Both the position numbers and the translations under genes were made by a program. Below the pieces are notes generated by a model. The model saw only the letters and a list, made by a program, of their open reading frames with translations, was not told where the DNA came from and ran no database searches. Below, piece by piece: positions 2,838 to 61,563 of a stretch of DNA of 64,000 nucleotides; the stretch's first letter is position 1; the number at the start of each line of letters is the position of its first letter. Location of the stretch: IMG/VR virus record IMGVR_UViG_3300042922_001182, positions 124,001 through 188,000 of that record; one strand, written 5' to 3'.

Positions 2838-3680
2838 CTAAGCCCTCCTGATGATCCTCAGCTGCTCGGAGATGAGCTTCCGCTGAGAGTCGGTCTTGGC
2901 TTCCCTGAGCTCCCGCTCAAGCTCTCGGATGATCTCCGCCCTGCGGTGGTGGAAGCTGAGGAGGGTGGTGGCGGCCCACTGGACCTTGCGCTCCGTCTGG
3001 GTGTCCCTCTGGGACTCCGCCATGGCGCCGAGCTTCTTGAGGACGGAGTGCAGCTCCGGCCCGTAGCCGTAGGAGATGGCCATGCTGTCGGCGGACTGCT
3101 CGATCTTGGAGCGTCGCATCTCCTCGACGAAGCCGCTGGAGAGGATGAATGCCAGGGGGATGGCGATCACGGCACCGGCTCCAGGGATGACGGCTAGCGC
3201 GGCCCCGGTCAGCCCCAGTAGGACCAGCTGCGTCGCGAGGTAGGCGGTGGCCCAGTTGCTCTCGCCCTTTAGGTCGGCCTTGTGGCCCACCTCGTGCAGC
3301 AGGACGGCCGTCATCTCCTTGGCGGTGAAAGCGCCGTCCGCAGCGCGGTCGAGGGCCTTCCCGTCGAGGGTGACGACCACCCCGGTCAGCCGGTCGAAGG
3401 TGATGCCCTTCTCCCCGCGAGCCATCCCGTTGGACACCTGCATGATGTCCTCCACCGAAGGCGAGCAGCTCATGAAGAAGAACTTATCGCCCGGAGAGGC
3501 CGGATAGATCTCGACGACGCACTGGATGCCGAAGACCTCCCTCATCAACCCACCAAGCATCTCAAGATCCGAGCTGCAATCGGGGCGATTCGACCTCTTG
3601 CACTTGCCGATGATGTTTGCGAAGCACTGATCGACCGCGTCGAGCCTAGGCTCCTCGTATACCTTCTCCATCAGATACAT
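2838..3680 (-). CDS. zincin-like (HEXXH) putative metallopeptidase, probable virion protein
   Basis: AVLLHEVGH motif, hydrophobic segment, downstream EQSAD...YGYGPEL as in M48-like peptidases; AACA-N6-TA promoter upstream. Confidence 0.65.
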   Translation of the reverse strand: MYLMEKVYEEPRLDAVDQCFANIIGKCKRSNRPDCSSDLEMLGGLMREVFGIQCVVEIYPASPGDKFFFMSCSPSVEDIMQVSNGMARGEKGITFDRLTGVVVTLDGKALDRAADGAFTAKEMTAVLLHEVGHKADLKGESNWATAYLATQLVLLGLTGAALAVIPGAGAVIAIPLAFILSSGFVEEMRRSKIEQSADSMAISYGYGPELHSVLKKLGAMAESQRDTQTERKVQWAATTLLSFHHRRAEIIRELERELREAKTDSQRKLISEQLRIIRRA

Positions 3681-4935: not shown

Positions 4936-6540
4936 CTAGGCGGGCATCGTGCCGTTGTTGTTGAGGATGGTGATCTCGCACGCCACCGGGTTCAGCTCCT
5001 CGATGGTGTCGCGACGGGTGACCATGATGTTCGGCACGTTGCCGTTCATCGGGTCGCGGTAGTCGCGCTCCACGTTGAAGGTGTACGGGTAGTACTTGAA
5101 CGTCATCTGCTTGTTGCTGGAGGGGATGAAGATCATGCGGATCTTGCCCTGCGGCACGTTGTCGGACGACACCACGGCGTAGCGGTTGGCCGCGCCGGAC
5201 ACCACGCCGAAGTTGTAGTTCACGTCCACGCCGCCCATGTCGGCCGTCGCGTTGGTGAACTGCCACTCCACGCCCACGAGCACGGCGGCGTCGATGGGGT
5301 TGCAGATGATGGCGTAGGAGCCGGAGTAGTACGAGGAGTCCGACTTCATCTTGTTGGCGAAGTAGTCGATGACGCCGCGCAGCTCCTTCTTCCACTCGGT
5401 CGGCGAACCGGCGTAACCGGCCGACGGGTGGCAGTCGAAGGAACCCTGGTAGATCTCGCCGTGGAAGTGGAACGAGCGATCCAGGAACTTCAGGATCTCG
5501 CGGTCGACCTTCTGGGCGTGGACGTTGGAGATGATGTCAACCGCCTCCAGCGCCGAGTCGATGTTGTACAGGGCCAGGTTGTCCTGCAGGAACTCGATGG
5601 GCAGGGGCGAGTTGATGTGGGCGCCGGTGCCGATGACGACTTCCTTCAGGCGGATGTCGAAGCCGACGGCCTCGCCGTGGTTGCTGTTCTCATCCGTCAG
5701 GTAGCCGCGAACGACGACGCTCTTGGCGGTGCCTTCGACCGAGGTCAGGCGCAGCAGGCCGGTGACGCGGTCCAGGGCGCCCGTCAGGGTGCAGACCACG
5801 GTCTTGGCGGTGGGGGCGGCGGAGTCGGTGTAGGGCACGACGACCTCGCCGAAGAGGCGGTTGTCGTTGCTGAGGCGCAGCTCGACATCCTCGACCAGCA
5901 CGTCGACGGTGGTGGTGTCGGTCTTGGTGACGGTCACGGTGACCTTGTCGATGACGAAGTTGGCGTCGATCGAGTCACCGGCCTCCAGCGAGGCGCCAGC
6001 GACCAGCGTGATCAGGTTCACGCCCTTGGCGGGCATGGTGATCGGGTCGGTCGACAGCTTGGTCTTCTCCAAGATGGTGTCGGCGTCGGTGCGCATCGCC
6101 TGCGGCAGGTAGGCCTTGGTGCCGTCCTGGCGCTTGATGTAGGGGGTCAGCCAGGAGATCGAGAACTTCGGCAGGCGGACCGCCTCGGTGGGGATCGCCA
6201 TCTTGAGGCCGATCTTGGGCCACGACTTGCGGATCATGGGCATCGACAGGGCCGACACCGCCGCGATGTTCGCGGTCACGCTCTCGCTCAGGAAGTGGGT
6301 GCGGTTGTTCTTGATGAGCTGCTCGAAGGCAGCGGCATCCTCGGCCCGCAGACCCTTGCTGAGGAGCTCGATGTAGCTCTCGAAGTACGCCTGGTCGGCC
6401 ATGATTTCCTTCACGCCCTCCAGGGTGGTGACGCGCACACGGTCGCCTTCGAACTTCTCGGCGGCCTCGCGGATCACCTGAGACGCCTTGTCGGTCGTGA
6501 CGGGCGCCTGGTGCATGCTGGGGTAGATAATCTCGGACAT
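4936..6540 (-). CDS. major capsid protein precursor (T4 gp23/AR9-like)
   Basis: 534 aa; FLSE processing-like site followed by SMPMIRKSWP, PIEFLQD...IDSALE...VDREIL and C-terminal PNIMVTRR, typical of gp23-like capsids; strongly biased codons; own late promoter. Confidence 0.88.
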   Translation of the reverse strand: MSEIIYPSMHQAPVTTDKASQVIREAAEKFEGDRVRVTTLEGVKEIMADQAYFESYIELLSKGLRAEDAAAFEQLIKNNRTHFLSESVTANIAAVSALSMPMIRKSWPKIGLKMAIPTEAVRLPKFSISWLTPYIKRQDGTKAYLPQAMRTDADTILEKTKLSTDPITMPAKGVNLITLVAGASLEAGDSIDANFVIDKVTVTVTKTDTTTVDVLVEDVELRLSNDNRLFGEVVVPYTDSAAPTAKTVVCTLTGALDRVTGLLRLTSVEGTAKSVVVRGYLTDENSNHGEAVGFDIRLKEVVIGTGAHINSPLPIEFLQDNLALYNIDSALEAVDIISNVHAQKVDREILKFLDRSFHFHGEIYQGSFDCHPSAGYAGSPTEWKKELRGVIDYFANKMKSDSSYYSGSYAIICNPIDAAVLVGVEWQFTNATADMGGVDVNYNFGVVSGAANRYAVVSSDNVPQGKIRMIFIPSSNKQMTFKYYPYTFNVERDYRDPMNGNVPNIMVTRRDTIEELNPVACEITILNNNGTMPA

Positions 6541-7740: not shown

Positions 7741-9252
7741 CTAATCGGCGGTCAGCATGTAGAGGCACAGCACCGCCTCGTTGCCCAGCTTGCGGCTCGG
7801 CTCGCCTGCGGAGTCCAGGAGGTTCTTGGTGCTGCGCATGTTCTTCTCTGCCTCCTGGTTGGCCTCCTGGGAGAAGACACCACGCACGGAGACCGTATCG
7901 CCGTCGTAGTCGCCGTTGAGGGCGGCCAGGTAGGCGTTGGACATCTGGAGCGTGTCGACGAAGCCGTTGTCCTCCTCGGGGTAGTCGGGGAAGATCTCCG
8001 GGTAGTCCTCGAACATCCTGTTGCCCAGCTTCTGCACCTTCGTCTTCCTGGTGGAGAGAACGTGGATCTTCGAGGCGTGGATGTTCTGGTGGTGCTCGAC
8101 AGGGTACCGGGTGATGTAGACGTGCTTGTCGGCCGTCACCTTCTTCGCCACGATGTAGAGCAGGTCGATCAGGGTGAAGTCCCTGAGCAGGTCCTCCCTG
8201 TAGAGGGCCAGGGGGTACTCCTTGCCGTCGTCCGTCTTGATCATGATGGGGTCGAAGCGGTTCTCCTCGCTCTTGATGTAGAGCTGGATCATCTTCTTGA
8301 TCTTGGGGAGGGGGAACTGCGACAGAGGGTCCTTGAGCGTGTGGCGCTTGCCCTTCTCGTCCTCGATGAACTGGACGTCCCCGATCTCTGCCTGGAGGAA
8401 CTCCTGGATGCCGTGGACGAAGAAAGGGAAGAACTCCACGCACAGGTGGGACAGCGGGACGCCGGTCCTCTCGAAGCTGACCTTCATCTCCTCCGGCCGT
8501 TCGGCGTTGATCTTCGGGGCGCTGATGACGGCGCGGACGGCGTAGTCGATGCTCTTACCGAGGACGCCCTTCTGGATGATGCCGTTCTTCTTCGCCAGGC
8601 GCTGGGTCAGGTGCTCGAAGATCTCAAGCAGCTGGTCCTGGAGGGCCGCCTCGGTGGCGTGCCCGACGAAGCTGAACCCGCCGCTGGGGGAGGCGATGGT
8701 CAGGGAGAGGTTGAGCAGCCTGGAGTACATGGTGTTGAGCTCGTCAACCGAGATCTGGCCCTTCTGGGCCTTGGAGAGGTTGACGTCCCTGAAGAATGGA
8801 GGGATCACCAACCACTTGCCGACCAGGATCTCATCATCTTTGAGGGAGTTAACCAGGGCACGGCGTTCGTCTCGCAGGGCGCTGCCCGTGCTGGCGAACG
8901 TGAGCTTGCGGATGTTCCTGGTGAGGAAGTCGATACCGGTCTCGCCAGCCTCGTCCTCCACCAGCTCGCCGCCGACGATCTTGAACCTGGAGGTGCCCTC
9001 CAGGGCCTTCCGGAAGTTGCGGTCCATCGACACCATCGCCTTGAAGGCCACGGGGTGGATGAACTTCTTGCCCAGATCGATGTGGCCGAAGATCTCCCGC
9101 CTGTCCCTGCTACCGTAGGGACCGAACATCTCGTAGGAAAGCAGCCCGTCGCTCGTCGGCATGTTCCCCGGGTCGAACAGGATGGGGTTGGTGACCCTGG
9201 GGCACTGGTTGACCTCGACGATCTTGTCGAGAGGATTGATATCTAGCAGCAA
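7741..9252 (-). CDS. rpoC: multisubunit RNA polymerase beta' subunit, N-terminal catalytic part (probably virion RNAP)
   Basis: GLLSYEMFGP...RREIFGHIDL, LGKSIDYAVRAVI, TRYP and catalytic ALNGDYDGD; TTG start with GGAGG; late promoter. Confidence 0.92.
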   Translation of the reverse strand: MLLDINPLDKIVEVNQCPRVTNPILFDPGNMPTSDGLLSYEMFGPYGSRDRREIFGHIDLGKKFIHPVAFKAMVSMDRNFRKALEGTSRFKIVGGELVEDEAGETGIDFLTRNIRKLTFASTGSALRDERRALVNSLKDDEILVGKWLVIPPFFRDVNLSKAQKGQISVDELNTMYSRLLNLSLTIASPSGGFSFVGHATEAALQDQLLEIFEHLTQRLAKKNGIIQKGVLGKSIDYAVRAVISAPKINAERPEEMKVSFERTGVPLSHLCVEFFPFFVHGIQEFLQAEIGDVQFIEDEKGKRHTLKDPLSQFPLPKIKKMIQLYIKSEENRFDPIMIKTDDGKEYPLALYREDLLRDFTLIDLLYIVAKKVTADKHVYITRYPVEHHQNIHASKIHVLSTRKTKVQKLGNRMFEDYPEIFPDYPEEDNGFVDTLQMSNAYLAALNGDYDGDTVSVRGVFSQEANQEAEKNMRSTKNLLDSAGEPSRKLGNEAVLCLYMLTAD

Positions 9253-9286: not shown

Positions 9287-9298
9287 TAATGTTTTGTT
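9287..9298 (-). promoter_or_regulatory. late-type promoter AACA-N6-TA
   Basis: Minus strand AACA AAACAT TA upstream of the beta'-N gene. Confidence 0.75.
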
Positions 9299-9313: not shown

Positions 9314-9342
9314 AGCCCCAACACCTGGTCGGTGTTGGGGCT
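9314..9342 (-). terminator. stem-loop after the 1540-aa gene, probable terminator
   Basis: AGCCCCAACACC-loop-GGTGTTGGGGCT inverted repeat immediately past the stop codon. Confidence 0.6.
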
Positions 9343-9349
9343 GTTGACC

Positions 9350-12300
9350 TTACATGCTCTCGATCTGGGGGCTGACCCAGACGTCGAGCTGCGTGTTGAT
9401 GGGAGCGAAACGGCGCTTGATCGGGATCTCGGAGAGATCGCCGTAGACGCCGGTGGCATCGCCCTCTAGGTTGGTGGCGTCTCCACTCAGCCCGGAGACG
9501 TCGCCGGTGAGCCCGCCGATGTTGCCGGAGAGGTTCGACACGTCTCCCTTGAGGCCGAAGTCGATCGCGGCGATGACCGCGCCGAGGTCGGCGTTCTTGA
9601 GGACGTTCGCGCCCATCTCGACCAGCTCCGACTGGACGCTCTCGATCAGGGCCTTGACGGCGTTTGAAGCCGTTGCGATCGACTCGATCTCCTGGCGGGT
9701 GCCGTGCGCCACGTCGGCGTTGGCCTGCCGGAAGATCTCGTACGGGGGCTGGTTGGCCGGGACCTGGACCTCCTCCAGTTTGACGAGCGTCCCCGCCTTC
9801 GTCTCGAACCCGCCTAGGCTCCCGGTTGCCACCGACAGCGTCTGCTTGATGGCCTCGACACCGGAGACGATGGCCACGATGATGTTGACGCCGTCGTAGA
9901 CCGAGTTGTAGAGGTCGTCGGCGTTGTCCTCCGTCTCCCAAGCCTTCTTGCGAAGGTCCCTGGCCTCGGTCCGCAGCGCCGCCCTGAGCCTGGTGGCCCT
10001 GGTGAACGCGTCGGAGTCCTTGGTGATGGAGTCCGCCATGCTGAAGGCGGAGTCGCAGGCGGCCCCGATCATCGCGGTGATGGACGCGACCGTGGTGCCT
10101 GGGATGAGCCTGCTCCTGGTCGAATCAGAGGCGACGCCCGCCGTCATGGTGGCGCTCGCAGCCTTGAGGGCCTTGAGCTCCGTGACGGCCAGCGGGACGT
10201 GCTCCCTCAGCTCGGCGATCCTGGTGTCGGTGGCCGCCGACGAGTCGACGGTCGTCATGAGCATCTGGTCGACCCGGGCCATGAGGAGGGTCAGCCTGTC
10301 CACCATCGCCTTCAGCTTCTCCAGGGCATGCGCTGGGGTCTCGATGAACGGGACGAAGACGGAGGAGGACGACTGCACGAAGCCGTTGTAGGTGTTGGCT
10401 TGACCGAGGGCCAGGTTCGAGACCGTCGCCATGGCGTCCAGGGAGTCGCTGATATCCTGCCTCACATCGGCGGATGGCATCAGCGTCTCCGAGGCCTGGA
10501 TGAACGCCTTGGCATCCGCCAGGGCGGTGTTCAGCGCTCCGAAACCAAGCGGCTCCTGAGGGGTTCCGCCGCCCACGATGGCCTGTACCATGGCCTGGGT
10601 CTGGGTCTTGAAGGGAGAGGTGGCCCCTGGTACGATGTCCTTCAGCGTACCGAGGATGTCCTGGGGCCTATTCCCCTGCAGCAGGGAGTCCAGCTCTCCG
10701 ATCTTCTGGGCCGTGAGGGAGAAGGAGTTGGCGATGGCGTTCATCTTCACCGACAGGTTCTCGTCGAACCCGACCCGCACCAGGCTCTCGTCGTGCAGGC
10801 CGAAGGCCGAGACCCTGATCGTGGAGCAGCGGGTCGCTAGCGCCGTGACGGGGCCGTCGATCGTCGTCCTGATGTACGCCAGGGCGCTGGAGTAGAGGGT
10901 GATATCCGAGAGGTTGGAGGTGATGACGCTGACGTTGGACAGCAGCTCCTCGATGGCGCCCTGGGACTGGCCGAAGCCGGTGATCTCCTCTCCTCCTTCG
11001 ACTTCCACGATGTAGGGTGCGACCTTGGATCGGAAGGACGAGTTGAGGGTGTTCAGGGCAGTGCTGACCTGGTTGGAGGAGTTCGTCGCGTCGGTGTGCT
11101 TCGTGTTCTCGTCGGCGGTCAGCGACGAGTTGCTGGTGTAGGCATCCCTGGCCACGGTCGTCACCTGGTCCCCGATCTCGAACACCTTGGTCCTGATCTC
11201 CTTGGAGAACTCCGTGGAGTAGGGGGCCAGGGTGCCGGTGACGGGGGCCTTGTGGGCCTCGATGTAGGTGAGGAGCGAGTCCACCGAGGTCTTGACCGCG
11301 TTGATGGATGCTGAGATCGATGTCCGTGAGGCCGCCTCGTACGGAGAGGTCCCTGCCGTGACCGACGTTCGGACGTGCTCAAGGGTCTCGTAGAGACGGT
11401 AGTCATCCGGCCCTGCCACGGTCCCCGATGCCTTCATGGAGACGGAGATCTCCTCAAGGATGGCGTTGATAGCCTCGTGGAGCTGGAGCATGTCCGCCTG
11501 GCCCACCGAGGGCATCGACGCCTCTCTGGCCAGGTCAGCCAGCTGGAGCGAGAGGCTGCTAGCCGCCTGCGACAGGGAGACCGCGTTCGGGATGCTGGCC
11601 TCGATGACCTCGCTCATGAAGTCGCTTCTCTGTTGCATCGCAGTAGCAAAGAGCGCCAGCGAACCCGTATCCGCACCGCCCCCCGTGCCGGGGGTAAGGA
11701 GCGAATCCGCCTTGGTCTTGAGGTCGTCGAGAAGGGGCGGGTAGGACGCCGCGAGGGAGCGCTTGACCACGAGATAGTCGGAGTTCTCCGTCGCCCCAGC
11801 GGACGTTTCTTGGGCAGCTGCCGCCAGGTTATCGGCGGCCTCCGTGGCAGAGTCCCGGAGCTGTTCCGACACGAGGTCGTCCAGGGTCCCCGGTACTTTT
11901 GCGGCGGCGCTCAAAGCGTTGCAGAGGATAAGCAGCTGAGAGGCTTTCCCCTTGAGCGCCAGAGACGCGTCAACGGCGTTCTGCTCGGTCGGGTAGGGGA
12001 GGGTGGTGTGAGATAGGAAGTTCTCGATTAGAGAAAGACTGCTCTCGCACGCCTGAAGCTGTGTTGTCACCTGGTCGTAGGACGAGGAGATCGCCGCCGT
12101 GTAGGAGTCGATGCCGTCCAGCTCCAGGCCGAAGGCCGTGGAGCGGCTCGCGAGCTCCCCCTGGATGGTGGTAACTGCGGCCTCCTCTACGGCGACTGCG
12201 GCGGTTTCCTCGGCAGTCGCCGCAAGGGGATCGAGCGCCAGCTTGGCCTTGAAGTCGATCACCTTGGTCTTGATCTGGTTGGCGGCCAGGTCCACAGCCG

Positions 12301-13972
12301 AGTTCTTGGCCGCTGCGACCGATGTACTGGAAGCGGCGGTCATCTCGGTGGCGGCCAGGTCCATCGCATCCGCCTTGGAACGGATGTCGGTAGGGTGTCC
12401 GGAGACCACCGCCAGCAGGGACTTCTTATCGTCGTAGGCCGGGCGGATGGCCGCGACCGCATTGACGATGGTCGCGCAGTAGTCGGTGATGGCCTCGATC
12501 GAGGTCGCCACACCGTCCTTGTCGTTCTCCGGTACGGACGCGTAGTTCGTGTCCACCCAATTCTGGACGGGGGTCAGCGCGGTGGTGACCTCGTCGGTGT
12601 GCCCCGACGCGGCCGTCATCGCGGCCTCCGCGTTGGCCTGGTTGAGGGTGGCGCCGGAGGCAGCGGTCGAAAGGGCCGTGATATCCGCTTCGAGGACGGC
12701 GATAGCGGCCAGCAGGTCATCTGCCAGGTCGTTGAAGGTGGCGTTCCCCGGAGTGTTTACCAGCTTGTCCTTGAGGTCTGAGGTCTCGGTGGACGCCTGG
12801 TCGATCGCCTCCCCGACCGAGTTGGCGGCGGCGCTGCAGTACGCCTTTAGGTTGAGCAGGCTGTCGATGGAGGTGGCGAAGGCCCTGGCCTTGGAGGAGA
12901 GCTCCGAGGACTTCTCGGAGACCCCGCTGATGTGAGGCGCCTTCGAATCCTCGTAGAGGCCCGCCTCCGAGATGGTGTCGAGCGCCTCCGTCAGGGTGTC
13001 GACGGCCGACCGGATGGAAGGGACATACGTGTTCAGGTTGTTGGTGGTGTCCACCTCAGAGGCAAGCGACGAAGACAGACCTTGGAGTAATGAGCTGACC
13101 TGCAGCGCCGACGCCCTTGCGATCAGGGCGTCGGCGGATATCTTCTGCGATGGGTTGGTGAGCTTCGCCGTCTCCTGGCGAACGGAGTTGATCGCCCCTG
13201 AGGCGGTCTCGGCCAGGGAGGCGGCGTTGCTGGACATGGACGCCGCAAGCACGGCGGAGTTGCAGGCGTTCAGGAAGGTCATCTCCGCATCGAAGGCGAC
13301 CTGGGACAGGCTACCAGCGATGTCCTTGAAGCTGTCGGCGGCCCCCATGACCGCGTCCATGATGTCCCTGTCGGTCCCGGCCTCGGGCATAGCCATCACC
13401 GCGTCCGCCAGGGCGTTGAACAGAGGGGTACCGAGGCTGGGGAGCTCGACCTTGATGAGGCCGTAGATCCTTGAGCAGTCCCCCTCCAGGGTGGTGATCA
13501 TCCCGGCCAGGCCGGACACGTCTCCGCTGAGCCCGGTGGCGTCCCCCCAGACCTTGGAGACGTCGCCCCTGAGGCCGGACACGTCGCCGCTGAGCATGGC
13601 CACGAGCCCGGAGATGTTGCTGACGTTGCCCCTGATGGCGTTGGTGATGCCGTAGATCCGCGTGCAATCGCCTTCGAGCTTCGTCACGTCCCCGATGAGA
13701 CCGGACACGTCGCCGCTCAGCTTGGAAACGTCGCCAGCGATCTTGGTGATGTCGCCGCTGATGTTGGAGCAGTCGCCGTAGATCATGCCGGTCAGCATGC
13801 CGCGAAGGCCGGAGCAGTCGCCCCTGAGCCCCATGGCGGTCCCCGTGATGTTGGAGCAGTCGCCCCTGAGCTCGAAGATGTTGACCACCAGACCGAGACG
13901 CGGGCCGCTGATGGGCAGCCTGTGCGTCGCGAGATCGTGGTGGTAGAGTCTCTTCTTCTTCCTTACAAGCAT
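9350..13972 (-). CDS. 1540-aa protein: heptad (LxGDxSx) repeat arrays at both ends around a ~1300-aa Ala/Ser/Thr-rich helical region
   Basis: RBS GGAGG; about 19 LSGDVSG-like repeats near the N-terminus and about 6 at the C-terminus; function not recognised. Confidence 0.8.
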   Translation of the reverse strand: MLVRKKKRLYHHDLATHRLPISGPRLGLVVNIFELRGDCSNITGTAMGLRGDCSGLRGMLTGMIYGDCSNISGDITKIAGDVSKLSGDVSGLIGDVTKLEGDCTRIYGITNAIRGNVSNISGLVAMLSGDVSGLRGDVSKVWGDATGLSGDVSGLAGMITTLEGDCSRIYGLIKVELPSLGTPLFNALADAVMAMPEAGTDRDIMDAVMGAADSFKDIAGSLSQVAFDAEMTFLNACNSAVLAASMSSNAASLAETASGAINSVRQETAKLTNPSQKISADALIARASALQVSSLLQGLSSSLASEVDTTNNLNTYVPSIRSAVDTLTEALDTISEAGLYEDSKAPHISGVSEKSSELSSKARAFATSIDSLLNLKAYCSAAANSVGEAIDQASTETSDLKDKLVNTPGNATFNDLADDLLAAIAVLEADITALSTAASGATLNQANAEAAMTAASGHTDEVTTALTPVQNWVDTNYASVPENDKDGVATSIEAITDYCATIVNAVAAIRPAYDDKKSLLAVVSGHPTDIRSKADAMDLAATEMTAASSTSVAAAKNSAVDLAANQIKTKVIDFKAKLALDPLAATAEETAAVAVEEAAVTTIQGELASRSTAFGLELDGIDSYTAAISSSYDQVTTQLQACESSLSLIENFLSHTTLPYPTEQNAVDASLALKGKASQLLILCNALSAAAKVPGTLDDLVSEQLRDSATEAADNLAAAAQETSAGATENSDYLVVKRSLAASYPPLLDDLKTKADSLLTPGTGGGADTGSLALFATAMQQRSDFMSEVIEASIPNAVSLSQAASSLSLQLADLAREASMPSVGQADMLQLHEAINAILEEISVSMKASGTVAGPDDYRLYETLEHVRTSVTAGTSPYEAASRTSISASINAVKTSVDSLLTYIEAHKAPVTGTLAPYSTEFSKEIRTKVFEIGDQVTTVARDAYTSNSSLTADENTKHTDATNSSNQVSTALNTLNSSFRSKVAPYIVEVEGGEEITGFGQSQGAIEELLSNVSVITSNLSDITLYSSALAYIRTTIDGPVTALATRCSTIRVSAFGLHDESLVRVGFDENLSVKMNAIANSFSLTAQKIGELDSLLQGNRPQDILGTLKDIVPGATSPFKTQTQAMVQAIVGGGTPQEPLGFGALNTALADAKAFIQASETLMPSADVRQDISDSLDAMATVSNLALGQANTYNGFVQSSSSVFVPFIETPAHALEKLKAMVDRLTLLMARVDQMLMTTVDSSAATDTRIAELREHVPLAVTELKALKAASATMTAGVASDSTRSRLIPGTTVASITAMIGAACDSAFSMADSITKDSDAFTRATRLRAALRTEARDLRKKAWETEDNADDLYNSVYDGVNIIVAIVSGVEAIKQTLSVATGSLGGFETKAGTLVKLEEVQVPANQPPYEIFRQANADVAHGTRQEIESIATASNAVKALIESVQSELVEMGANVLKNADLGAVIAAIDFGLKGDVSNLSGNIGGLTGDVSGLSGDATNLEGDATGVYGDLSEIPIKRRFAPINTQLDVWVSPQIESM

Positions 13973-13990
13973 TGGCGACCTCCAGTTTGC

Positions 13991-14689
13991 CTAGCGGTTG
14001 TGTACGTCGTAGTGACCGGCGGTCTCACCCTTTTGGAAGTCCTGCCGGTAGCCGAGAAGTTCGATGTGCCGCAGGCTGGCCTCGATGCCAGCCGCGTCCA
14101 GGTCGGTGTTGTAGCCGAGGATCGGGTAGAGGAACTGCTTGCCGATGGAGTCGCTGTTCCGCATGACTTCGAGGAGAATGTCGATGCGGTCGTCGATGTA
14201 CATGGTGTAATCGACGGTCTTCAGGAATTCGGACTTCGGGACCCCGGGCGGGACCGCGATCAGCTCGATCTTGTCTGAGGGCATGTGCCTGCGGAGCCAG
14301 TCCAGCTTGCTCTGCTCGGTGCCAGGGATGGTGTGGCTGACGACGTAGATCTGGTCGACGCCAGAGCTCTTCGAGGCGAGCCAGATGGCCTTGCCCATCT
14401 CGGTGATGTCGCAATCCGCATAGAAGTCGTCCTCGATGTAGAGGGACATGAACTCGGAGTGGACATCCCTGGGAAGGCCGCCGACGTTGGGCCTAGTCAG
14501 CCACTTGTCGAGGTAGTACTCGCCTCTCCCCATGATCTCCTCGATGGTCTTGGGGTCCACGTCCAGCCACGGGCCGAAGAAGTTGGCCCTCTCGACGAGC
14601 TTGCGGTGCCAGACGGGGCAGATGTTGACAAGCACCTCGTCCATATCCGTGGCGATTATGGACTTGTTCAACGCGCTGGCGAAATCCAT
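13991..14689 (-). CDS. HAD-superfamily 5'(3')-deoxyribonucleotidase-like phosphatase
   Basis: Motif I ATDMDEVLVN, SKLDWLRRH, motif IV MYIDDR; RBS AGGAG before ATG 14689 (ORF track start 14770). Confidence 0.8.
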   Translation of the reverse strand: MDFASALNKSIIATDMDEVLVNICPVWHRKLVERANFFGPWLDVDPKTIEEIMGRGEYYLDKWLTRPNVGGLPRDVHSEFMSLYIEDDFYADCDITEMGKAIWLASKSSGVDQIYVVSHTIPGTEQSKLDWLRRHMPSDKIELIAVPPGVPKSEFLKTVDYTMYIDDRIDILLEVMRNSDSIGKQFLYPILGYNTDLDAAGIEASLRHIELLGYRQDFQKGETAGHYDVHNR

Positions 14690-14776
14690 TCCTAACTCCT
14701 CATTTGTCTCTTGTGTGGGGGGAAAAGGGAGGACGGAGCCAAGATCTCTCTTGGCTCCGTCGTTGTACAACCGTTG

Positions 14777-15574
14777 CTAGCCTTCCGAGTCGAACAGGTT
14801 GTCGATCTCGCCCTCGGCGACCTTGGTCACGGGGGACTTGCCGCCGACGGCGGGGGCGCCGGGCAGCTCGCGGCGGCGGCGGCGCTGACCGCCACCCTGG
14901 ACGGACTCCGTGGCCTCGCGGCGGGGCTGGTTGCCGCCAGCGGGAGCGGGACCGGCGGACAGCAGGTGCTCCTTGTTGCAGACGCGCTCAGCCGCCTGGA
15001 GGAAGCTCTCCAGGGTGTCCAGCTCGTGGTTGAACTTGTGGGTGTGGTCCGAGTGGCCGTCGTCGTCGGGGTTGAGGGTGATGACGCGGTGCAGCGCCTC
15101 CTCGGGAAGGATGTAGATGTTGTCGGCCTTGATCTTGCCGTCGGCGTCGTACTCCTTGAGGGCCAGGTACCACAGGCCGATCTCGTTCGGGGCGAGCTCG
15201 GTCTCGTCATCGATCGCCATGTCGTTGCCGATGATGAGGACCTTCTTGCCGTTGCGGCCGGGGTGGGCGATGGCGAACGACTGCACGCCGCTGGTCTCGG
15301 GGTCCTTGATCCAGGTGAGGCCCTGCTGGATGCCCTTCACGTCGCCGAGGTCGACCTGGAAGAAGACCTTCGCGTCGTGGTTGTACATCTGGAGGCCCTT
15401 CTGGGGCTCCTTGCCAGCGTGCTCCTTGAAGACCGGCGACAGGCTGAAGAAGGCCTTGTCCTGCCAGAAGCCCAGCTCCAGGGCGCCGTAGTTGTTGTTG
15501 TAGAGGATATGGGCTCGGACAGACGTGCCCTTCTGCTGGGTGTCCTGGCCGCCGTTGGCGTTCTGCTCGGTCAT
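14777..15574 (-). CDS. putative single-stranded DNA-binding protein
   Basis: Beta-rich aromatic N-domain, G/P-rich linker, acidic tail EGEIDNLFDSEG, next to DNA polymerase; function inferred. Confidence 0.5.
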   Translation of the reverse strand: MTEQNANGGQDTQQKGTSVRAHILYNNNYGALELGFWQDKAFFSLSPVFKEHAGKEPQKGLQMYNHDAKVFFQVDLGDVKGIQQGLTWIKDPETSGVQSFAIAHPGRNGKKVLIIGNDMAIDDETELAPNEIGLWYLALKEYDADGKIKADNIYILPEEALHRVITLNPDDDGHSDHTHKFNHELDTLESFLQAAERVCNKEHLLSAGPAPAGGNQPRREATESVQGGGQRRRRRELPGAPAVGGKSPVTKVAEGEIDNLFDSEG

Positions 15575-15611: not shown

Positions 15612-15623
15612 TATCGACTTGTT
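15612..15623 (-). promoter_or_regulatory. AACA-N6-TA promoter
   Basis: Minus strand AACA AGTCGA TA upstream of 15574. Confidence 0.7.
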
Positions 15624-15668: not shown

Positions 15669-16432
15669 CTAGAACGTCACGATGTTGCTGTACTGGGAAC
15701 CAGCCGGTGTCTTGATCACCTTGAGGTCCATGCTCTCAAGAACGATGAAGCCGTTCCTGACGTTGTCGGAGGCGATGGTGTCCATGTCGATGAACTGGAT
15801 CAGCCACTCCGGGATGCGGTCGACCGACTTGGGGATGGCCAGGATGGTGAACCCGAACCGCTCCATCTTGGGGCTCTTGAAGACCGCCCTGTGGATGGCC
15901 TCGTACTGCGGGGTGCCGAAGATGGGGGCGAGGTCGCCGATCTTCTCCGCCTTCATCTTGAACAGGAGCACGTCCTCCGGGGCCGACAAGACCGGGAGTC
16001 TCTCCTCCGGGGGCAGCGCCTCCTGGAGGGCGTTCCACACGATGGAGCCGCGCACGGGGGCCTGGGTGTACGGGGCCTTGTACGCGCCGGAGCCGTCGAT
16101 GTACTCGTCGTTCGCGTCGCGGTCGCCGGGGTCGTTGAGGCGACCGGGCACGCCGAAGGTCACCTCGCCACGGGCCAGGCTCTCCTTCACGGACTTCTCG
16201 AACTCGCGGAACTTGCCCAGGACCCCGGACGTGCTCATGTCATCCGAGCCGAGGACGTCGTCCTTGATCAGCTTGGTGAAGAACTGGCGGGTGGTCTTGT
16301 TGACCGTGGTCTTCTTGATCGACAGGCCCTTGATGTCCAGCTTGGGCGGATCGATGATCGTGCCCTCCTGGGCCTTCAGGAGCCCGGCGTACTGCTTCTT
16401 GTTGTTGGTGGTCATCAACCTTGTGTAGAGGA
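15669..16432 (-). CDS. polB: family-B DNA polymerase, exon 2
   Basis: After splicing reads (F)LYTRLMTTNNKKQYAG...LDIKGLSIKK, the PolB KKxY and KG motifs; no RBS of its own. Confidence 0.9.
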
Positions 16433-16624
16433 CTCGGTGTTCACCCGGGGTCGCAGGTCCCGGATCGCCCCTAGGGGCAGCTGCGCGTCTCCGCGCAGGA
16501 CAGACTATATCATCACCCGCTTGGGGTGCCTCCCGTTTGGGGTACCATTGGCTTGTACCCTACGTGCATAAAGCACTAGTCGTTGAACCTTCCCGAAAAA
16601 AGTGAAACTACCCGTCCGTCGACC

Positions 16625-16633
16625 ACATATTCT
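16625..16633 (+). promoter_or_regulatory. early-type promoter motif ACATATTCT inside intron loop L6
   Basis: CGACC-ACATATTCT, one mismatch to the ACATATTAT motif seen at 32846 and 50816. Confidence 0.6.
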
Positions 16634-16710
16634 TTACATGAGCAAGATAGGATTTAGGGTCCGTACTATCATGCCTACGTCAGCACAGGATCCCTTTAGG
16701 AGGAATAACA

Positions 16711-16896
16711 ATGCTCAGCTCTTTGTTCAACGGTATCGGTGGCGCTGTGGAGTCCATCGGCAACGGCGTGTTCGGCGCGGTAGACGAGATCTTGGACGGC
16801 ACCTGGAAGGCCGGTGAGAGCATCGTCAAGGGCGTCGGCGGTGCGGCCGATGGGGCCTGCAAGGCGGTCGACTCGCTGTTCGGCGACATCGACTAG
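16711..16896 (+). CDS. 61-aa amphipathic 11-mer-repeat peptide, antisense within the group I intron
   Basis: Strong RBS AGGAGG, C/G-ending codons like other genes, flanked by promoter motif and terminator. Confidence 0.8.
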   Translation: MLSSLFNGIGGAVESIGNGVFGAVDEILDGTWKAGESIVKGVGGAADGACKAVDSLFGDID

Positions 16897-16902
16897 TCCA
16901 TA

Positions 16903-16936
16903 GGAGGCGGGGGTAACACCCCGCCTCTCTTTTTTT
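16903..16936 (+). terminator. intrinsic terminator of the intron-nested gene
   Basis: GAGGCGGGG-loop-CCCCGCCTC followed by TCTTTTTTT. Confidence 0.85.
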
Positions 16937-17033
16937 CGGGCTTGGCTGCTGATTACCCGCTTCGGGCTTCCCAGCAATTAGAGAGGTTTGCATACGGGCG
17001 TTGCCACCCGTAGGAGCTAGGCCACGCGGGCCA

Positions 17034-18252
17034 ACTCGTTCTTCATGTTGATGATGGGGCGCTTGTCCTCGGGGATGTTCATGTTCCTGGTCAGGGTGGC
17101 GTAGGTGCTCTCGATGACCCTGGCGAGCAGGTAGATGACGACGTTGACGACGCTCACGCGGTCGACGTCCTCCTTCGTCTTGGCCCCCAGCTCGTCGCGG
17201 CAGAACCGGACGAAGGGGTCGACGTTGATGAAGTTGGAGTCCGTGTCCACCACCAGGACGGCGGCCCTGGGGTCCTGCTCGGCCCGCTGGAAGTGGTCCT
17301 CCGGGATGTGGTCGTGGTACACGAAGTGTGCCAGGTAGCCCCAGAGCTCCTTGAGGTAGGGCAGGACGTCCTCCGCCGGGTGGTCGGCGTTCGTGACCTT
17401 GAGGTCGCTGGCGAACAGGGATTCAAGCACCTTCCTGGCGTTGGCGCACCGGCGCAGGAACTCGTAGAGGTTGTTGCGGAAGAAGACTCGCGCCACCTCG
17501 TAGGGGTCCAGGGAGGACACGGCCTTGAGCAGGATCGCCCGCGCCTCGTCGGAGGGGTGCTTGCGGAACCTGGACAGCAGGTGGCCCATGAGCTCGTCGT
17601 GGGTCGGGGGATTGTCGAGGACCCACACCCTGTCCGCGCTGCGCTGGGACTCCTCCGGCATGCAACGCTCGACGAACAGCAGCGCCTCCGACAGGTCGTT
17701 GAACGGGCAGTTACCGGCGAGGAACTGCTCGAAGGCCATGACCGACGCGGTGATGATCGTGCGACCCGTGTACGTGACGCTGGGGCCGACTCGCGGGTTG
17801 AAGAAGATGCAGTTCTTCTCGCCCGACGCGCCGTAGTAGGAGTTGGCCAGGAGCTTGATCGTCTTCTGGTCGCGGTCGTAGTTGTCGTGGAGGGTGCGGT
17901 CCACGTCGTTGACGTGGGCCAGCATCTTCTTCTTCGCCACCTTGCGGCTCTTCATGAGCCACTCCAGCATGGCCGCGATCAGGTTGATCGAGTTGGAGTG
18001 CTGCTTGTAGGCGGTCCCGTAGGGCGTGAACACCGGCTGGTGCTTGCCCAAGAGGAAGTCCGAGAACTGCAGGACGTCGATCTGCTTGTCCGCCCCGGTC
18101 GTGTCGTTGTTGAAGGAGCACCCCGGCTTCCTCACCCTCTCGTCGACGATCGCGTCGACCTTGGCCCGGATGGCCTCGGGGTCCCTGTCGGGGAACTGGC
18201 GGACCAGGACCTCCATGACCTCTGCCTTGTAGGCCTCAAGAGTTGCTGACAT
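17034..18252 (-). CDS. polB: family-B DNA polymerase, exon 1 (spliced product 660 aa)
   Basis: Motif B QKTIKLLANSYYG, SVTYTGR, motif C VVDTDS, ends IINMKNE at the splice site; RBS GGGAGG. Confidence 0.92.
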
Positions 18253-18311: not shown

Positions 18312-19184
18312 CTAGAAGTAGAACCGTTGTCCGCCGACGCCGAAGCTGTGGAAGCCGTGGACCTTCGCCACCGCTTGCCTAACGTCGTTCTCGTCCTTGG
18401 TGATGTACGTACCGCAGTCGTACCGCAGGCTGTCGGGGATACCGTCTCCGTAGTGGACCAGCACCGTCTTCGCCCGGACCCACATCGAGAGCTCCCGATG
18501 GAGCTGCCAGAAGTTGGTATGGACGTCGCTCTTACCGGCGTTCGGGCCGACGAACATCTGGCAGTCGTGGAAGACCATGTCCAGGTCCTTGCCAAGGGTG
18601 CGGTACGGGTACTGCTCAAGGAGCATCGGGTGGATCTCCTTGCAGTCGCTGGTCCAGAGCACCCGCTGGTCGATGAGCAGGCCCCAGCTGTCGTGGCCGT
18701 GGACGTGCTTCATCTTCACGGGTTTCAGGTGGATGTTCTCGAACGTCATGGTCGTCTTTTCGTTGAAAAGCGCCACGTCGAAGTAGGTGCTGATGTCCGC
18801 CTTAACGTGATTGTCCTCCTCGTCCTGTATGTCGAGCATGCCTCCAGAGAGGACGCCGCTCCACAGGGTTCCGACCTGGTCCTCCGAGACGAAGAGCCTC
18901 AGCTTGCGGCCCTTGACGAAGTAGTAGTAGAACCCCAGCGTCTCCAGGCCACCGGCGTGGTCGTCGTGGAGGTGGGTGATGTAGACCGCATCGATCTTGT
19001 CCACGGAGCCGTTCTCCATGATCCGACGAACGGTGTCTGGGCTAGCGTCGATGAGCAGGTTGTATTCTTTCCCGTGGTCCCAGTTCTTCCAGGTGAGCAG
19101 GGCGTTGGTGTTTCCGAGTCCGGTCCTCGACATGGCGGAACCCACCCCGATGAGGGTCAGGCAAAACTTCTTCTTGTTGGACAC
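18312..19184 (-). CDS. metallo-beta-lactamase-fold hydrolase (RNase Z/phosphodiesterase-like)
   Basis: LIGVGSA, LLID, ITHLHDDHAGG (HxHxDH), WTSD, VH and VHY motifs. Confidence 0.88.
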   Translation of the reverse strand: MSNKKKFCLTLIGVGSAMSRTGLGNTNALLTWKNWDHGKEYNLLIDASPDTVRRIMENGSVDKIDAVYITHLHDDHAGGLETLGFYYYFVKGRKLRLFVSEDQVGTLWSGVLSGGMLDIQDEEDNHVKADISTYFDVALFNEKTTMTFENIHLKPVKMKHVHGHDSWGLLIDQRVLWTSDCKEIHPMLLEQYPYRTLGKDLDMVFHDCQMFVGPNAGKSDVHTNFWQLHRELSMWVRAKTVLVHYGDGIPDSLRYDCGTYITKDENDVRQAVAKVHGFHSFGVGGQRFYF

Positions 19185-57401: not shown

Positions 57402-57445
57402 GGCCGGTCGGGGCCTCCTTTGCGGGTAGGGTCGGGGGAAGGTCG

Positions 57446-57457
57446 TATGGGGCTGTT
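57446..57457 (-). promoter_or_regulatory. AACA-N6-TA promoter
   Basis: Minus strand AACA GCCCCA TA upstream of 57401. Confidence 0.7.
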
Positions 57458-57764
57458 GGCGGGGGCATTTCCAGGTTATGCGGAGGCGTGCCTCGCTCGC
57501 GGTTAATGATTCCGTATGTCAGAGTAAGTTCTAGGATACATAGTTGCAAATGAAAGAGAGAAAGGAGTACAACAACTCCTTTCTTCTTATTTAAACACGA
57601 AGTTACCTAGAGGTCCCCTAGAGAACCTGGAAAAGGTCATCAAAGGATAGTTTTGACCGGTAATTAACTTTTTAGGGAAGACCTTAAAGGTCTAAACGGT
57701 ATGTATCTGTAAATCGCGCGAAATCCCACCCAGGGAATAAAGCGAATCTAAGCCATTTCCGACC

Positions 57765-59481: not shown

Positions 59482-59910
59482 ATGGCAGACGAAATCGTGC
59501 CCGAGTACCAGAAGGAGGAGTTCTTCCTCCAGGTGGGCGACTTCAAGAAGGCCAACTCGGTGACCAAGAACCTAGCCCTCGCGAGGGTGCTGCAGACCCT
59601 CATCATCCTGATGCCGGGCACCTACCCCAACGCCCCCGACATGGGCGTCGGGATCGAGCAGTACCTCTTCGAGTTCCTGGACGGCGTGACCATCCAGCAG
59701 CTCACCCAGAGGCTGCGGGACCAGATCGACACCTACATCCCCAACAACGACATCAACGGGATCGAGATCCAACCGATCAAGGGCCCCGACGGCAAGACCA
59801 ACACCCTGGGAATGATCTTCACGCTGGGGAATTCGGAACAGGTGGCCTTGGCCTTCGACCTGGCCGCATCCCGCAAGACCAAGGTGGTCTCCCGCGTCGT
59901 CCTCGCCTGA
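59482..59910 (+). CDS. baseplate wedge / sheath-initiator protein (T4 gp25-like)
   Basis: LIILMPGTYPNAPDMGVGIEQYLFE...QIDTYIP matches the gp25 GER..P.FG..L..LFE pattern. Confidence 0.7.
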   Translation: MADEIVPEYQKEEFFLQVGDFKKANSVTKNLALARVLQTLIILMPGTYPNAPDMGVGIEQYLFEFLDGVTIQQLTQRLRDQIDTYIPNNDINGIEIQPIKGPDGKTNTLGMIFTLGNSEQVALAFDLAASRKTKVVSRVVLA

Positions 59911-61534: not shown

Positions 61535-61563
61535 GGTTCAAGTACCGCAAGTACGCTGAACTT

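What the first reader, a model, noticed from the sequence alone, without database searches (positions are those of the whole stretch)
9350..13972. 1540-aa protein that looks like a heptad-repeat solenoid split by a ~1300-aa helical insertion
Seen: about 19 LxGDxSx heptads (about 13870-13460) stop abruptly and resume as about 6 more (about 9555-9430). Between them lies an Ala/Ser/Thr/Leu-rich, aromatic-poor region with weaker codon bias than neighbouring genes. It sits at the end of the replication operon, not among tail genes. Inference: a small beta-solenoid repeat gene acquired a very long helical-bundle or coiled-coil insert, so the two ends may rejoin into one solenoid at the base of a long stalk. 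Function unknown (fibre, scaffold or decoy).
Basis: partly seen in the sequence, partly recalled or inferred. Interest (0 to 1): 0.6.

Follow-up and report, generated by a model that had tools for sequence, protein, structure and literature searches.

The report
Giant split heptad-solenoid phage protein
A jumbo phage related to Bacillus phage AR9 encodes a real 1540-residue protein in which a small, widespread but unnamed seven-residue-repeat domain is interrupted by a roughly 1290-residue, fast-evolving helical segment; its function is still unknown.

Summary
ORF 9350-13972 (-) is one 1540-aa gene. It has 20 [LIV]xGD[VC][ST]x heptads at residues 35-174 and 6 more at residues 1474-1515. Between them lies an acidic Ala/Ser/Thr/Leu-rich middle with amphipathic alpha periodicity.

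The genome is a 239-kb AR9/PBS1-like jumbo phage. Two related metagenomic phages carry orthologues of 1363 and 1197 aa at the same genomic place, with the same split layout. Their ends are conserved. The middle of this protein matches nothing among 1.84 billion representative proteins, and does not match the orthologues' middles either.

Insert-less relatives do exist:
- A 323-aa paralogue in the same genome has about the same number of heptads (27 versus 26) and the same C-terminal tail.
- A large, mostly viral family of small heptad proteins has a median length of 193 aa. None of 124 surveyed has a non-repeat gap of 200 aa or more.

A moderate AlphaFold model of the N-terminal block resembles only beta-solenoids, and only weakly (Z up to 6.1).

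Whether the two ends pack into one solenoid stays untested, because the complex test gave no verdict. The codon-bias claim is not distinctive. The gene ends a three-gene unit that has an AR9-type late promoter motif and a terminator hairpin. This is a new variant of a known kind.

The parts
9350..13972 (-). Complete CDS of the 1540-aa protein (P0001), stop codon included
   Evidence: GC3 0.89 throughout; orthologues P0199 and P0201 at the same genomic place in two related phages
13871..13972 (-). N-terminal basic leader, residues 1-34 (net +5), conserved in the orthologues as M-x-L-K/R-R-x-K-K-R-[VL]-[FY]-H-x-D
13451..13870 (-). N-terminal heptad block, 20 units [LIV]xGD[VC][ST]x, residues 35-174; predicted beta-solenoid
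   Evidence: AF2 model pLDDT 59.8; structural neighbours are all beta-solenoids with Z up to 6.1
9578..13450 (-). Middle region, residues 175-1465: acidic (net -73), rich in Ala/Ser/Thr/Leu, amphipathic-helical, no internal repeats, no detectable relatives. Its first ~25 and last ~150 residues are conserved in the orthologues.
9428..9553 (-). C-terminal heptad block, 6 units, residues 1474-1515
9353..9427 (-). C-terminal tail or cap, residues 1516-1540 (I-P-x-K-R-R ... V-W-V-[SE]-P), shared with paralogue P0002 and the orthologues
   Evidence: comparable caps after the last heptad in other family members
13979..13983 (-). GGAGG ribosome-binding site 6 nt before the ATG; only 18 nt separate this gene from the upstream gene
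9316..9340 (-). 10-bp GC-rich hairpin directly after the stop codon; likely terminator of the transcription unit
   Evidence: read directly from the sequence. The tool's strict T-run rule did not list it.
13991..14770 (-). Upstream gene in the same unit: 259-aa homologue of the AR9 g151 5'(3')-deoxyribonucleotidase
   Evidence: 31 % identity, 4e-24; phrog_20022
14777..15574 (-). First gene of the unit: 265-aa protein with no known relatives
   Evidence: a gene of similar size sits at the same place in L011
15612..15623 (-). AACA-N6-TA motif (AR9 late-promoter type) 49 nt upstream of the 265-aa gene
   Evidence: AR9 consensus from PMC5312081
9287..9298 (-). AACA-N6-TA motif after the hairpin, 46 nt before the virion RNA polymerase beta' gene; it starts the next unit

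Best explanation
P0001 is a genuine single gene of an AR9/PBS1-like, high-GC jumbo phage. It belongs to a large, unnamed, mostly viral family of small proteins built from [LIV]xGD[VC][ST]x heptads that end in a short C-terminal cap. This domain most likely folds as a beta-solenoid.

In P0001 and its two known orthologues, one loop of that domain has grown into a helical, acidic excursion of about 900-1290 residues that evolves very fast. The first ~20 heptads lie on one side of it. The last ~6 heptads plus the cap lie on the other.

Inferred, not shown: the two blocks stack into one solenoid of about 26 heptads, the same size as the insert-less paralogue. That solenoid would be the conserved binding or anchoring module, and the helical excursion would project from it as a long, loosely constrained arm made of many helices of 12-45 residues.

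The protein has no enzymatic signature. It is co-transcribed with a deoxyribonucleotidase homologue from an AR9-type late promoter motif, at the border between the replication genes and the virion genes. I therefore read it as a non-enzymatic architectural protein, a spacer or scaffold. It slightly more likely acts inside the infected cell than in the virion.
For: - Real gene: open frame, high GC3, Shine-Dalgarno site.
- Orthologues with the same layout at the same genomic place in two phages. The N-terminal region aligns at 5e-38 and the C-terminal region at 8e-22.
- Family membership: paralogue P0002 at 3e-26, with the shared tail at 2e-14; 75 family hits for P0002; mostly viral clusters in the ESM Atlas, a library of predicted protein structures; 97 metagenome loci.
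- Heptad counts: 26 in P0001, 25 and 27 in the orthologues, 27 in P0002.
- Insertions are tolerated in the family, but no other reaches 200 aa. The largest gap among 124 ORFs is 113 aa.
- P0002 and the two orthologues share a loop entry (G-[IF]-[FI]-G-G) at the same point of the N-terminal block.
- Solenoid reading: Gly is the only invariant column, every 7 residues. AF2 gives strands or bridges in the heptads. The leading VIA-align rows are beta-solenoids (MfpA Z 6.1, rmsd 3.2 over 119 residues; LbH acyltransferases; Qnr; bactofilin; ryegrass ice-binding protein).
- Helical middle.
- Fast evolution of the middle: no hit in 1.84 billion representatives or by word search. Middle-against-middle E is above 0.5 versus both orthologues, while those two match each other at 1.6e-24.
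- Transcription unit.
- Small family members lie in early or accessory regions rather than structural ones.
Against: - Packing of the two blocks is not demonstrated. The complex job gave no verdict and the full-length orthologue model is unusable (pLDDT 32.5).
- The N-block model is only moderate (pLDDT 59.8, pTM 0.32). Its structural matches are under the Z of 8 that the tool calls meaningful, and Foldseek found nothing below 1e-3.
- Sequence searches of the heptads weakly hit trimeric coiled coils (8qox_B at 8.5e-5, P22 gp26, fibritin, the Lpp zipper).
- The late-type promoter motif, the adjacent virion genes and a weak PHROG 'minor head protein' hit (1.7e-4) fit a virion protein equally well.
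- No expression or proteome data could be obtained.
Confidence: 0.55

Rival explanations
1. Dumbbell. The two heptad blocks are independent solenoid domains at the two ends of an elongated helical rod and never touch. The protein bridges two partners or sites at a distance.
For: No support for N-C contact was obtained (neither informative). Both blocks are conserved separately.
Against: - The C-terminal block has only 6 heptads, which is very short for a free-standing solenoid.
- Only the C-terminal block carries the family's cap, and the N-terminal block ends without one.
- The total heptad number equals that of the insert-less paralogue.
All three points are indirect.
Confidence: 0.2
2. Coiled-coil fibre. 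The heptads are alpha-helical a/d repeats (V at a, L at d) of a trimeric coiled coil, continuous with a helical middle. The protein is a long trimeric fibre, such as a whisker, tail fibre or head fibre.
For: - The hydrophobic spacing of 3.5 residues is strong in the heptads and continues to about residue 350.
- There are weak sequence hits to Lpp, 8qox_B, the P22 gp26 needle, fibritin and sigma-1.
- An AR9 late-type promoter motif is present.
Against: - An invariant Gly in every heptad is the only fully conserved column of the family.
- Beta-branched residues or Cys occupy position 5, and Ser/Thr position 6.
- AF2 places no helices in most heptads, and its structural neighbours are all beta-solenoids.
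- All coiled-coil family hits are below their curated cut-offs.
- The middle has 39 Pro and 62 Gly.
Confidence: 0.1
3. Virion-internal or ejected protein. It would be a capsid inner-body or ejection protein packaged with the virion RNA polymerase. The conserved basic N-terminus would be the packaging signal, and the acidic helical middle a low-constraint filler.
For: - The gene lies directly upstream of the virion RNA polymerase beta' subunit, a 149-aa gene, a 205-aa gene and the major capsid protein gene.
- A late-type promoter motif is present.
- There are weak hits to a PHROG 'minor head protein' family (1.7e-4) and to phiKZ_IP (0.23).
- Internal head proteins of jumbo phages are known to diverge fast (general knowledge).
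Against: - Both family hits are not significant or are below cut-off.
- A hairpin and a separate promoter motif divide it from the virion genes.
- It is co-transcribed with a nucleotide-metabolism gene.
- Relatives of the heptad domain sit in early or accessory regions.
- AR9 and a 53 %-identity relative have no such gene at this place.
Confidence: 0.25

Closest known systems
Unnamed phage heptad-repeat proteins (P0002 in this genome; P0006, P0009, P0024; the 133-aa protein UOF80481.1 of podovirus MW202691; ESM Atlas clusters of 72-232 aa)
   Same: Same [LIV]xGD[VC][ST]x heptad with Gly every 7 residues. Same kind of C-terminal cap after the last heptad. Significant sequence similarity. P0002 also has about the same total number of heptads.
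   Different: All others are small (median 193 aa, maximum 601 aa in 124 ORFs), with non-repeat gaps of at most 113 aa. P0001 and its two orthologues carry a helical insertion of about 900-1290 aa.
Pentapeptide-repeat proteins (MfpA, Qnr, AlbG; right-handed quadrilateral beta-helix)
   Same: Best structural neighbours of the N-block model (2bm4 Z 6.1, rmsd 3.2 over 119 residues; EfsQnr 5.5; AhQnr 5.2; AlbG 4.9). They are short-period solenoids built from one repeated unit per face. The paralogue P0002 is encoded between phage gyrB and gyrA, which recalls the gyrase link of this family.
   Different: The period is 7, not 5. There is no Pfam pentapeptide hit. Z is below the level the tool calls meaningful. 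The heptad blocks are near neutral rather than strongly acidic. The gyrase adjacency is conserved synteny in one clade; it is absent from the 80 metagenome loci surveyed, and the one other case, L016, came from the P0002 homologue search.
Left-handed beta-helix hexapeptide acyltransferases, and two-sided beta-rolls with 7-residue half-repeats (ryegrass ice-binding protein, YadA head)
   Same: These are solenoids made from very short repeats with a conserved small residue at the turn. They appear among the structural neighbours (Z 4.8-5.7). There is a weak Pfam LbR_Ice_bind hit (0.021).
   Different: The rmsd is about 10-11 A for the LbH rows. No sequence family hit passes its cut-off. There are no catalytic or ice-binding signatures.
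SMC/Rad50-type split heads (architecture only)
   Same: A globular domain whose N- and C-terminal halves would be brought together by a very long helical excursion.
   Different: No ATPase or SMC family hit. The helical part is broken by 39 prolines into short helices rather than forming two long antiparallel arms. Rejoining of the ends is not shown here.
AR9/PBS1 region between g152 (DNA polymerase) and g145 (virion RNA polymerase beta')
   Same: Same gene order around the locus: family-B polymerase, g151-like deoxyribonucleotidase, then the virion RNA polymerase beta' N-terminal subunit. The same promoter motif types are present.
   Different: AR9 has three small genes (g150, g149, g148) where this phage has the 1540-aa gene. 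No AR9 homologue of P0001 was found.

Membership tests
Phage heptad-repeat ([LIV]xGD[VC][ST]x) family, unnamed | Tandem 7-residue units with invariant Gly at position 3 and hydrophobic residues at positions 1 and 5 | tested here: met
   26 of 26 units have Gly. The family alignment A2 has Gly as its only invariant columns.
Phage heptad-repeat ([LIV]xGD[VC][ST]x) family, unnamed | Significant sequence similarity to other members | tested here: met
   BLASTP to P0002 at 3e-26; tblastn to MW202691 at 3e-17; P0002 finds 75 relatives.
Phage heptad-repeat ([LIV]xGD[VC][ST]x) family, unnamed | Short non-repeat cap directly after the last heptad | tested here: met
   The I-P-x-K-R-R...V-W-V tail aligns with the P0002 tail at 2e-14 and with the orthologues.
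Phage heptad-repeat ([LIV]xGD[VC][ST]x) family, unnamed | Contiguous repeat array (gaps up to ~110 aa) | tested here: not met
   A 1299-aa gap lies between the blocks, against a maximum of 113 aa in 124 ORFs. P0001 is therefore a variant, not a typical member.
Beta-solenoid fold class | Repeats stack as coils of parallel beta-strands | tested here: inconclusive
   AF2 pLDDT 59.8, pTM 0.32. All leading VIA rows are solenoids but Z is at most 6.1. Foldseek found nothing under 1e-3.
Pentapeptide repeat (Pfam PF00805) | A(D/N)LXX five-residue repeats; Pfam hit above cut-off | tested here: not met
   The period is 7. No Pfam hit was found.
Lpp-type or trimeric coiled coil (PF04728 and similar) | Alpha-helical heptads; family score above cut-off | tested here: not met
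   21.4-25.5 bits against a cut-off of 29.1. Invariant Gly in each heptad and non-helical AF2 heptads argue against it.
phiKZ-like internal head proteins (PF12699) | Pfam hit above cut-off | tested here: not met
   E 0.23, 11.1 bits against a cut-off of 27.
Tail tape-measure protein | Similarity to tape-measure families; position in the tail module | tested here: not met
   No such hit for P0001. The 2764-aa ORF at 34223-42517 carries the tape-measure and M23-peptidase-like hits.
SMC/Rad50 | Walker A/B ABC ATPase head split by a coiled coil | tested here: not met
   No SMC or AAA family hit in Pfam, NCBIfam or PADLOC.

The most novel reading that the evidence does not exclude
The [LIV]xGD[VC][ST]x heptad proteins are a new class of phage beta-solenoid, with seven residues per face, that act as protein or DNA-enzyme binding modules. 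P0002 would be a regulator or mimic associated with the phage gyrase, analogous to Qnr and MfpA. P0001 would be a member in which a solenoid loop has been turned into a ~1300-residue helical arm, giving an SMC-like 'split head plus arm' architecture without an ATPase. It would tether the replication machinery or the genome inside the infected cell.
Probability: 0.1. Interest if true: 0.75.

Novelty: new variant of a known kind. Interest (0 to 1): 0.45.

Why it matters
The heptad family is common in phage genomes and metagenomes. The 80 best of 97 confirmed loci came back from one pattern scan, and the ESM Atlas holds many viral clusters. Yet it has no Pfam, PHROG or NCBIfam model and no solved structure. 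A seven-residue solenoid unit would add a new repeat length to the known 5- and 6-residue solenoids.

P0001 shows how far such a domain tolerates insertion. A ~1290-aa excursion has been kept for a long time while its sequence turns over completely. That makes it a natural test case for how solenoids fold around insertions, and for what giant orphan proteins of jumbo phages do.

In practical terms, the work also shows that the AR9 early and late promoter motifs carry over to a distant high-GC relative.

Tried and rejected
- Complex prediction of residues 1-200 against 1440-1540: ipSAE 0.28 and 0.26, under the 0.34 mark, so no verdict. It is not used as evidence either way.
- AF2 of the full 1197-aa orthologue with a 3-sequence alignment: pLDDT 32.5. 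Only the secondary structure is usable.
- Foldseek against the PDB and the ESM Atlas shape search with the N-block model: nothing meaningful.
- ESM Atlas feature search with P0001: no usable hit.
- Pfam, PHROG, NCBIfam and PADLOC on P0001 and its parts: only sub-threshold hits driven by repeats or coiled coils (Lpp, DUF1664, SPT5 KOW2, MINT_RAM7, SlaB, TigB).
- PDB sequence search of the middle: nothing.
- Megablast of the gene against phage records: nothing.
- The search for related loci in viral contigs with P0001, with the virion RNA polymerase subunit, and with the C-terminal alignment: nothing.
- The metagenome scan with the C-terminal alignment returned only generic heptad proteins and no further giant orthologue.
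- The genome search on the records behind L006 and L008: not held.
I did not try to get it another way.
- Literature searches for a described heptapeptide solenoid in phages found nothing relevant.
- Tape-measure idea rejected.
- Recent horizontal acquisition of the middle rejected: GC3 is typical of the genome and the layout is shared by three phages.
- A general link between heptad genes and gyrase genes rejected: only the AR9-like clade and L016 show it, and none of the 80 metagenome loci do.
- No genetic code other than table 11 was used.
Full report
**What is there**

The window is bases 124001-188000 of a 238,984-bp virus record with direct terminal repeats and about 62 % GC. ORF 9350-13972 on the minus strand is open and encodes 1540 residues (P0001). 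A GGAGG lies 6 nt before its ATG, and only 18 nt separate it from the gene upstream.

Read in sevens, residues 35-174 form 20 units and residues 1474-1515 form 6 units. The unit is [L/I/V]-x-G-D-[V/C/A/I]-[S/T]-x. Gly is present in 26 of 26 units and Asp in 18. Gly-to-Gly spacing of +7 occurs 21 times, against 4.7 +/- 1.8 in shuffles. Tandem Repeats Finder still sees 21- and 63-bp periodicity in the DNA.

The 1291 residues in between have this composition: Ala 16.1, Ser 11.2, Thr 9.1, Leu 9.8 %; aromatics 4.2 %; net charge -73; no internal repeats.

Its remark on codon bias is not distinctive. GC3 is 0.89 and Nc 35.7, against 0.84-0.97 and 26-39 for fourteen other genes. There is a dip to about 0.80 at residues 525-830.

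**The genome and the neighbourhood**

Neighbouring genes are:
- terminase (856-2835)
- a gp23-like major capsid protein (4936-6540)
- a virion RNA polymerase beta' N-terminal subunit (7741-9252)
- a family-B DNA polymerase in two exons (15669-16418 and 17017-18252) separated by a group I intron (16481-17043, Rfam 57.3 bits)
- an Apyc1-like metallo-beta-lactamase

The closest named relatives, judged by the RNA polymerase subunit, are the Bacillus phages AR9, PBS1, Goe21 and BpSp (44-47 % identity).

The 259-aa gene directly upstream of P0001 is a homologue of the AR9 g151 5'(3')-deoxyribonucleotidase (31 %, 4e-24). The order polymerase, nucleotidase, then virion RNA polymerase beta' matches AR9. 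There, three small genes occupy the place of P0001.

AR9's published promoter motifs (early AAATATATATTAT-N6-G; late AACA-N6-TA/G; PMC5312081) are recognisable here:
- About 20 intergenic (C)ACATATTAT sites, most followed by N6-G. None lies on the minus strand between 9350 and 20500.
- AACA-N6-T[AG] is enriched in intergenic DNA: 40 of 171 occurrences fall in 9.8 % of the genome. Thirty of these lie within 150 nt upstream of a start codon, most at 38-60 nt. They include sites before the capsid, tape-measure-like and RNA polymerase genes.

One such late-type site (15612-15623) lies 49 nt before the 265-aa gene. A 10-bp GC hairpin (9316-9340) follows the P0001 stop. A further late-type motif (9287-9298) precedes the virion RNA polymerase gene.

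P0001 is therefore the last gene of a three-gene unit: the 265-aa gene, the nucleotidase homologue, then P0001. It sits at the border of the replication and virion genes. 'End of the replication operon' is a fair description. The promoter and terminator assignments are inferences from motifs.

**Relatives of the whole protein**

The middle (residues 180-1465) found nothing by word search among proteins of comparable length. Residues 175-1374 found nothing but the protein itself in an exhaustive HMMER pass over 1.84 billion representatives. The PDB, the ESM Atlas (a library of predicted protein structures) and the phage records also gave nothing.

Synteny did better. The two metagenomic phages with the closest virion RNA polymerase subunit (58-59 % identity; JGI contigs of 245,793 and 168,283 bp) each have a large gene in the corresponding place. 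In the larger contig it follows genes of 259 and 235 aa. These are P0199 (1363 aa) and P0201 (1197 aa).

Both orthologues share:
- the basic N-terminus (M-x-L-K/R-R-x-K-K-R-[VL]-[FY]-H-x-D)
- an N-terminal heptad block of 18-19 units that ends in G-D-C-[ST]-x-I-Y-G...[EP]-L-P
- a long Ala/Ser-rich middle
- a conserved stretch of about 150 residues before 5-8 C-terminal heptads
- the tail I-[PA]-x-K-R-R...V-W-V-[ES]

BLASTP against P0199 gives 5e-38 for the N-terminal part and 8e-22 for the C-terminal part. The middles of P0001 and either orthologue are not alignable (E above 0.5), whereas the two orthologues match each other at 1.6e-24. A more distant relative (53 %) and AR9 lack the gene at this place.

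So the split layout is conserved and old within a small clade. The middle turns over far faster than the ends.

**Insert-less relatives**

The same genome encodes a 323-aa paralogue, P0002 (G000 56549-57520, outside the window). It consists of 27 heptads in three blocks separated by loops of about 25-30 residues, and it ends in the same tail. P0001's N block aligns to P0002 residues 56-249 (3e-26), and its C block plus tail aligns to residues 256-312 (2e-14), in the same order.

P0002's first loop begins G-I-F-G-G. The orthologues P0199 and P0201 have a loop beginning G-F-I-G-G at the matching point, and P0001 has lost it. This marks the two gene types as specific paralogues.

P0002 finds 75 relatives, some fused to Ser/Thr kinases or a secretin. 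ESM Atlas clusters with these features are 62-100 % viral and 72-232 aa long. One metagenome pattern scan confirmed 97 loci, and the best 80 were fetched. In the 124 heptad ORFs on those loci the median length is 193 aa, the maximum is 601 aa, and the largest non-repeat gap is 113 aa. None reaches 200 aa.

No Pfam, PHROG, NCBIfam or PADLOC model passes its threshold. The family is thus common, unnamed and normally small and contiguous. The ~1290-aa interruption is the derived and exceptional state.

**What the heptads fold into**

The hydrophobic spacing (positions 1 and 5) also fits a/d positions of a coiled coil. Sequence searches weakly hit trimeric coiled coils (Lpp 21-25 bits against a cut-off of 29.1; 8qox_B 8.5e-5; P22 gp26; fibritin).

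Several points argue against the coiled-coil reading:
- The only invariant columns in a 35-sequence family alignment are glycines every seven residues.
- Position 5 is beta-branched or Cys.
- AF2 of residues 1-200 with that alignment (pLDDT 59.8, pTM 0.32) puts short strands or bridges, not helices, in most heptads.
- An alignment of that model to 48,161 PDB representatives returns beta-solenoids throughout the leading rows: MfpA Z 6.1 (rmsd 3.2 over 119 residues), a designed solenoid 6.1, LbH acyltransferases 5.6-5.7, EfsQnr 5.5, Ag43 5.3, bactofilins 5.0-5.1 and the ryegrass ice-binding protein 4.8.

These Z values are below what the tool calls meaningful, and Foldseek found nothing. I rate 'beta-solenoid' as likely but not established, and the number of heptads per coil as unknown.

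**The middle**

Amphipathic alpha periodicity exceeds z = 2 in 37 % of 42-residue windows, against 3 % for beta periodicity. The unusable-for-packing AF2 model of P0201 (pLDDT 32.5) shows helices of 12-45 residues throughout the middle.

P0001's middle has 39 Pro and 62 Gly. The median Pro-free stretch is 29 residues and the longest is 114. This fits an array of helical hairpins or bundles better than one long two-stranded stalk.

**Do the ends rejoin?**

This was not resolved. The complex test of residues 1-200 against 1440-1540 scored 0.28 and 0.26, under its 0.34 mark, and gives no verdict. The full-length orthologue model is too poor to use.

Indirect arguments for one solenoid are:
- The C block is only 6 heptads.
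- It alone carries the family cap, and the N block ends without one.
- Block sizes are conserved in the orthologues.
- The total (26 heptads) equals that of the contiguous paralogue (27).

**Function**

There is no enzymatic, membrane or known structural signature. The tape-measure role is taken by the 2764-aa ORF at 34223-42517, which carries tape-measure and M23-peptidase-like hits.

For an intracellular role:
- co-transcription with a nucleotide-metabolism gene next to the polymerase
- small family members in early or accessory regions: beside an SSB gene in MW202691; in the region divergent from the terminase and portal genes, near an HTH regulator gene, of a 37-kb contig; near ParB and radical-SAM genes
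- P0002 and its orthologues between gyrB and gyrA

For a virion role:
- the late-type promoter motif
- the virion genes immediately downstream
- a weak PHROG 'minor head protein' hit (1.7e-4)

I commit to a non-enzymatic architectural protein: a conserved solenoid as the binding module, plus a long, weakly constrained, acidic helical arm. I lean modestly toward an intracellular role, roughly 50:35 against a virion role. This functional part is inference.

**Novelty and score**

Beta-solenoids and giant orphan proteins of jumbo phages are both familiar. A seven-residue solenoid family without any database model, and a member that has kept a ~1290-aa insertion inside the repeat array across three divergent phages, are a new variant. 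Interest is 0.45. The architecture is neat and checkable, but the packing and the function remain open.

Only table 11 was used.

Noticed in passing
G000:C1:56549-57520 (+), outside the window; L002:1234-2205: The 323-aa heptad paralogue P0002 lies between phage gyrB (53455-55842) and gyrA (59816-62296). Its orthologues P0009 and P0024 lie in the same place in two related phages, and P0020 lies just upstream of gyrB on contig L016. The N-block model's nearest structures include the gyrase-binding pentapeptide proteins MfpA, Qnr and AlbG. However, none of the 80 metagenome loci with a heptad gene has a gyrase gene nearby, so this is conserved synteny in one clade, not a family-wide link.
   Followed up: partly
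window 16481-17043 (-): A group I intron (Rfam RF00028, 57.3 bits, E 6.5e-12) splits the family-B DNA polymerase gene into 17017-18252 and 15669-16418. A 69-aa ORF (16680-16889) lies inside it.
   Followed up: partly
whole genome G000; in the window e.g. 3805(+), 20533(+), 32785(-), 32847(+), 50817(+), 57766(+), 59412(-): About 20 intergenic (C)ACATATTAT sites, most followed by N6-G, match the AR9 early (virion RNA polymerase) promoter consensus. AACA-N6-T[AG], the AR9 late type, is enriched in intergenic DNA, and 30 copies lie within 150 nt upstream of a start codon, most at about 40-55 nt. The AR9 transcription scheme seems conserved in this 62 % GC relative.
   Followed up: partly
window 18312-19184 (-): A 290-aa metallo-beta-lactamase-fold protein matches the Pfam anti-Pycsar Apyc1 family (6.7e-21, 75 bits against a cut-off of 50). 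A similar gene lies next to gyrB in relative L006.
   Followed up: no
window 34223-42517 (+): A 2764-aa ORF has M23-type metallo-endopeptidase and tape-measure-like hits at residues ~2200-2390. It is the probable tail tape-measure and cell-wall-lytic protein.
   Followed up: no
L011:3608-7696 (P0199 residues ~96-143) and L012:548-4138 (P0201 residues ~95-135): In both orthologues the N-terminal heptad block is interrupted by a ~45-residue Gly/Ala-rich hydrophobic loop that resembles a glycine zipper or membrane segment. P0001 lacks it.
   Followed up: no
L019 and L021 (metagenome contigs Ga0163155_10025178 and Ga0163144_10091256): Four separate heptad-repeat ORFs (253-357 aa) lie on each of these short contigs, so the family also expands within single contigs.
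   Followed up: no
window 2838-3680 (-): A 280-aa protein next to the terminase has a borderline Peptidase_M48 hit (9.2e-4, just under cut-off). The same arrangement is seen in both close relatives (L011, L012).
   Followed up: no
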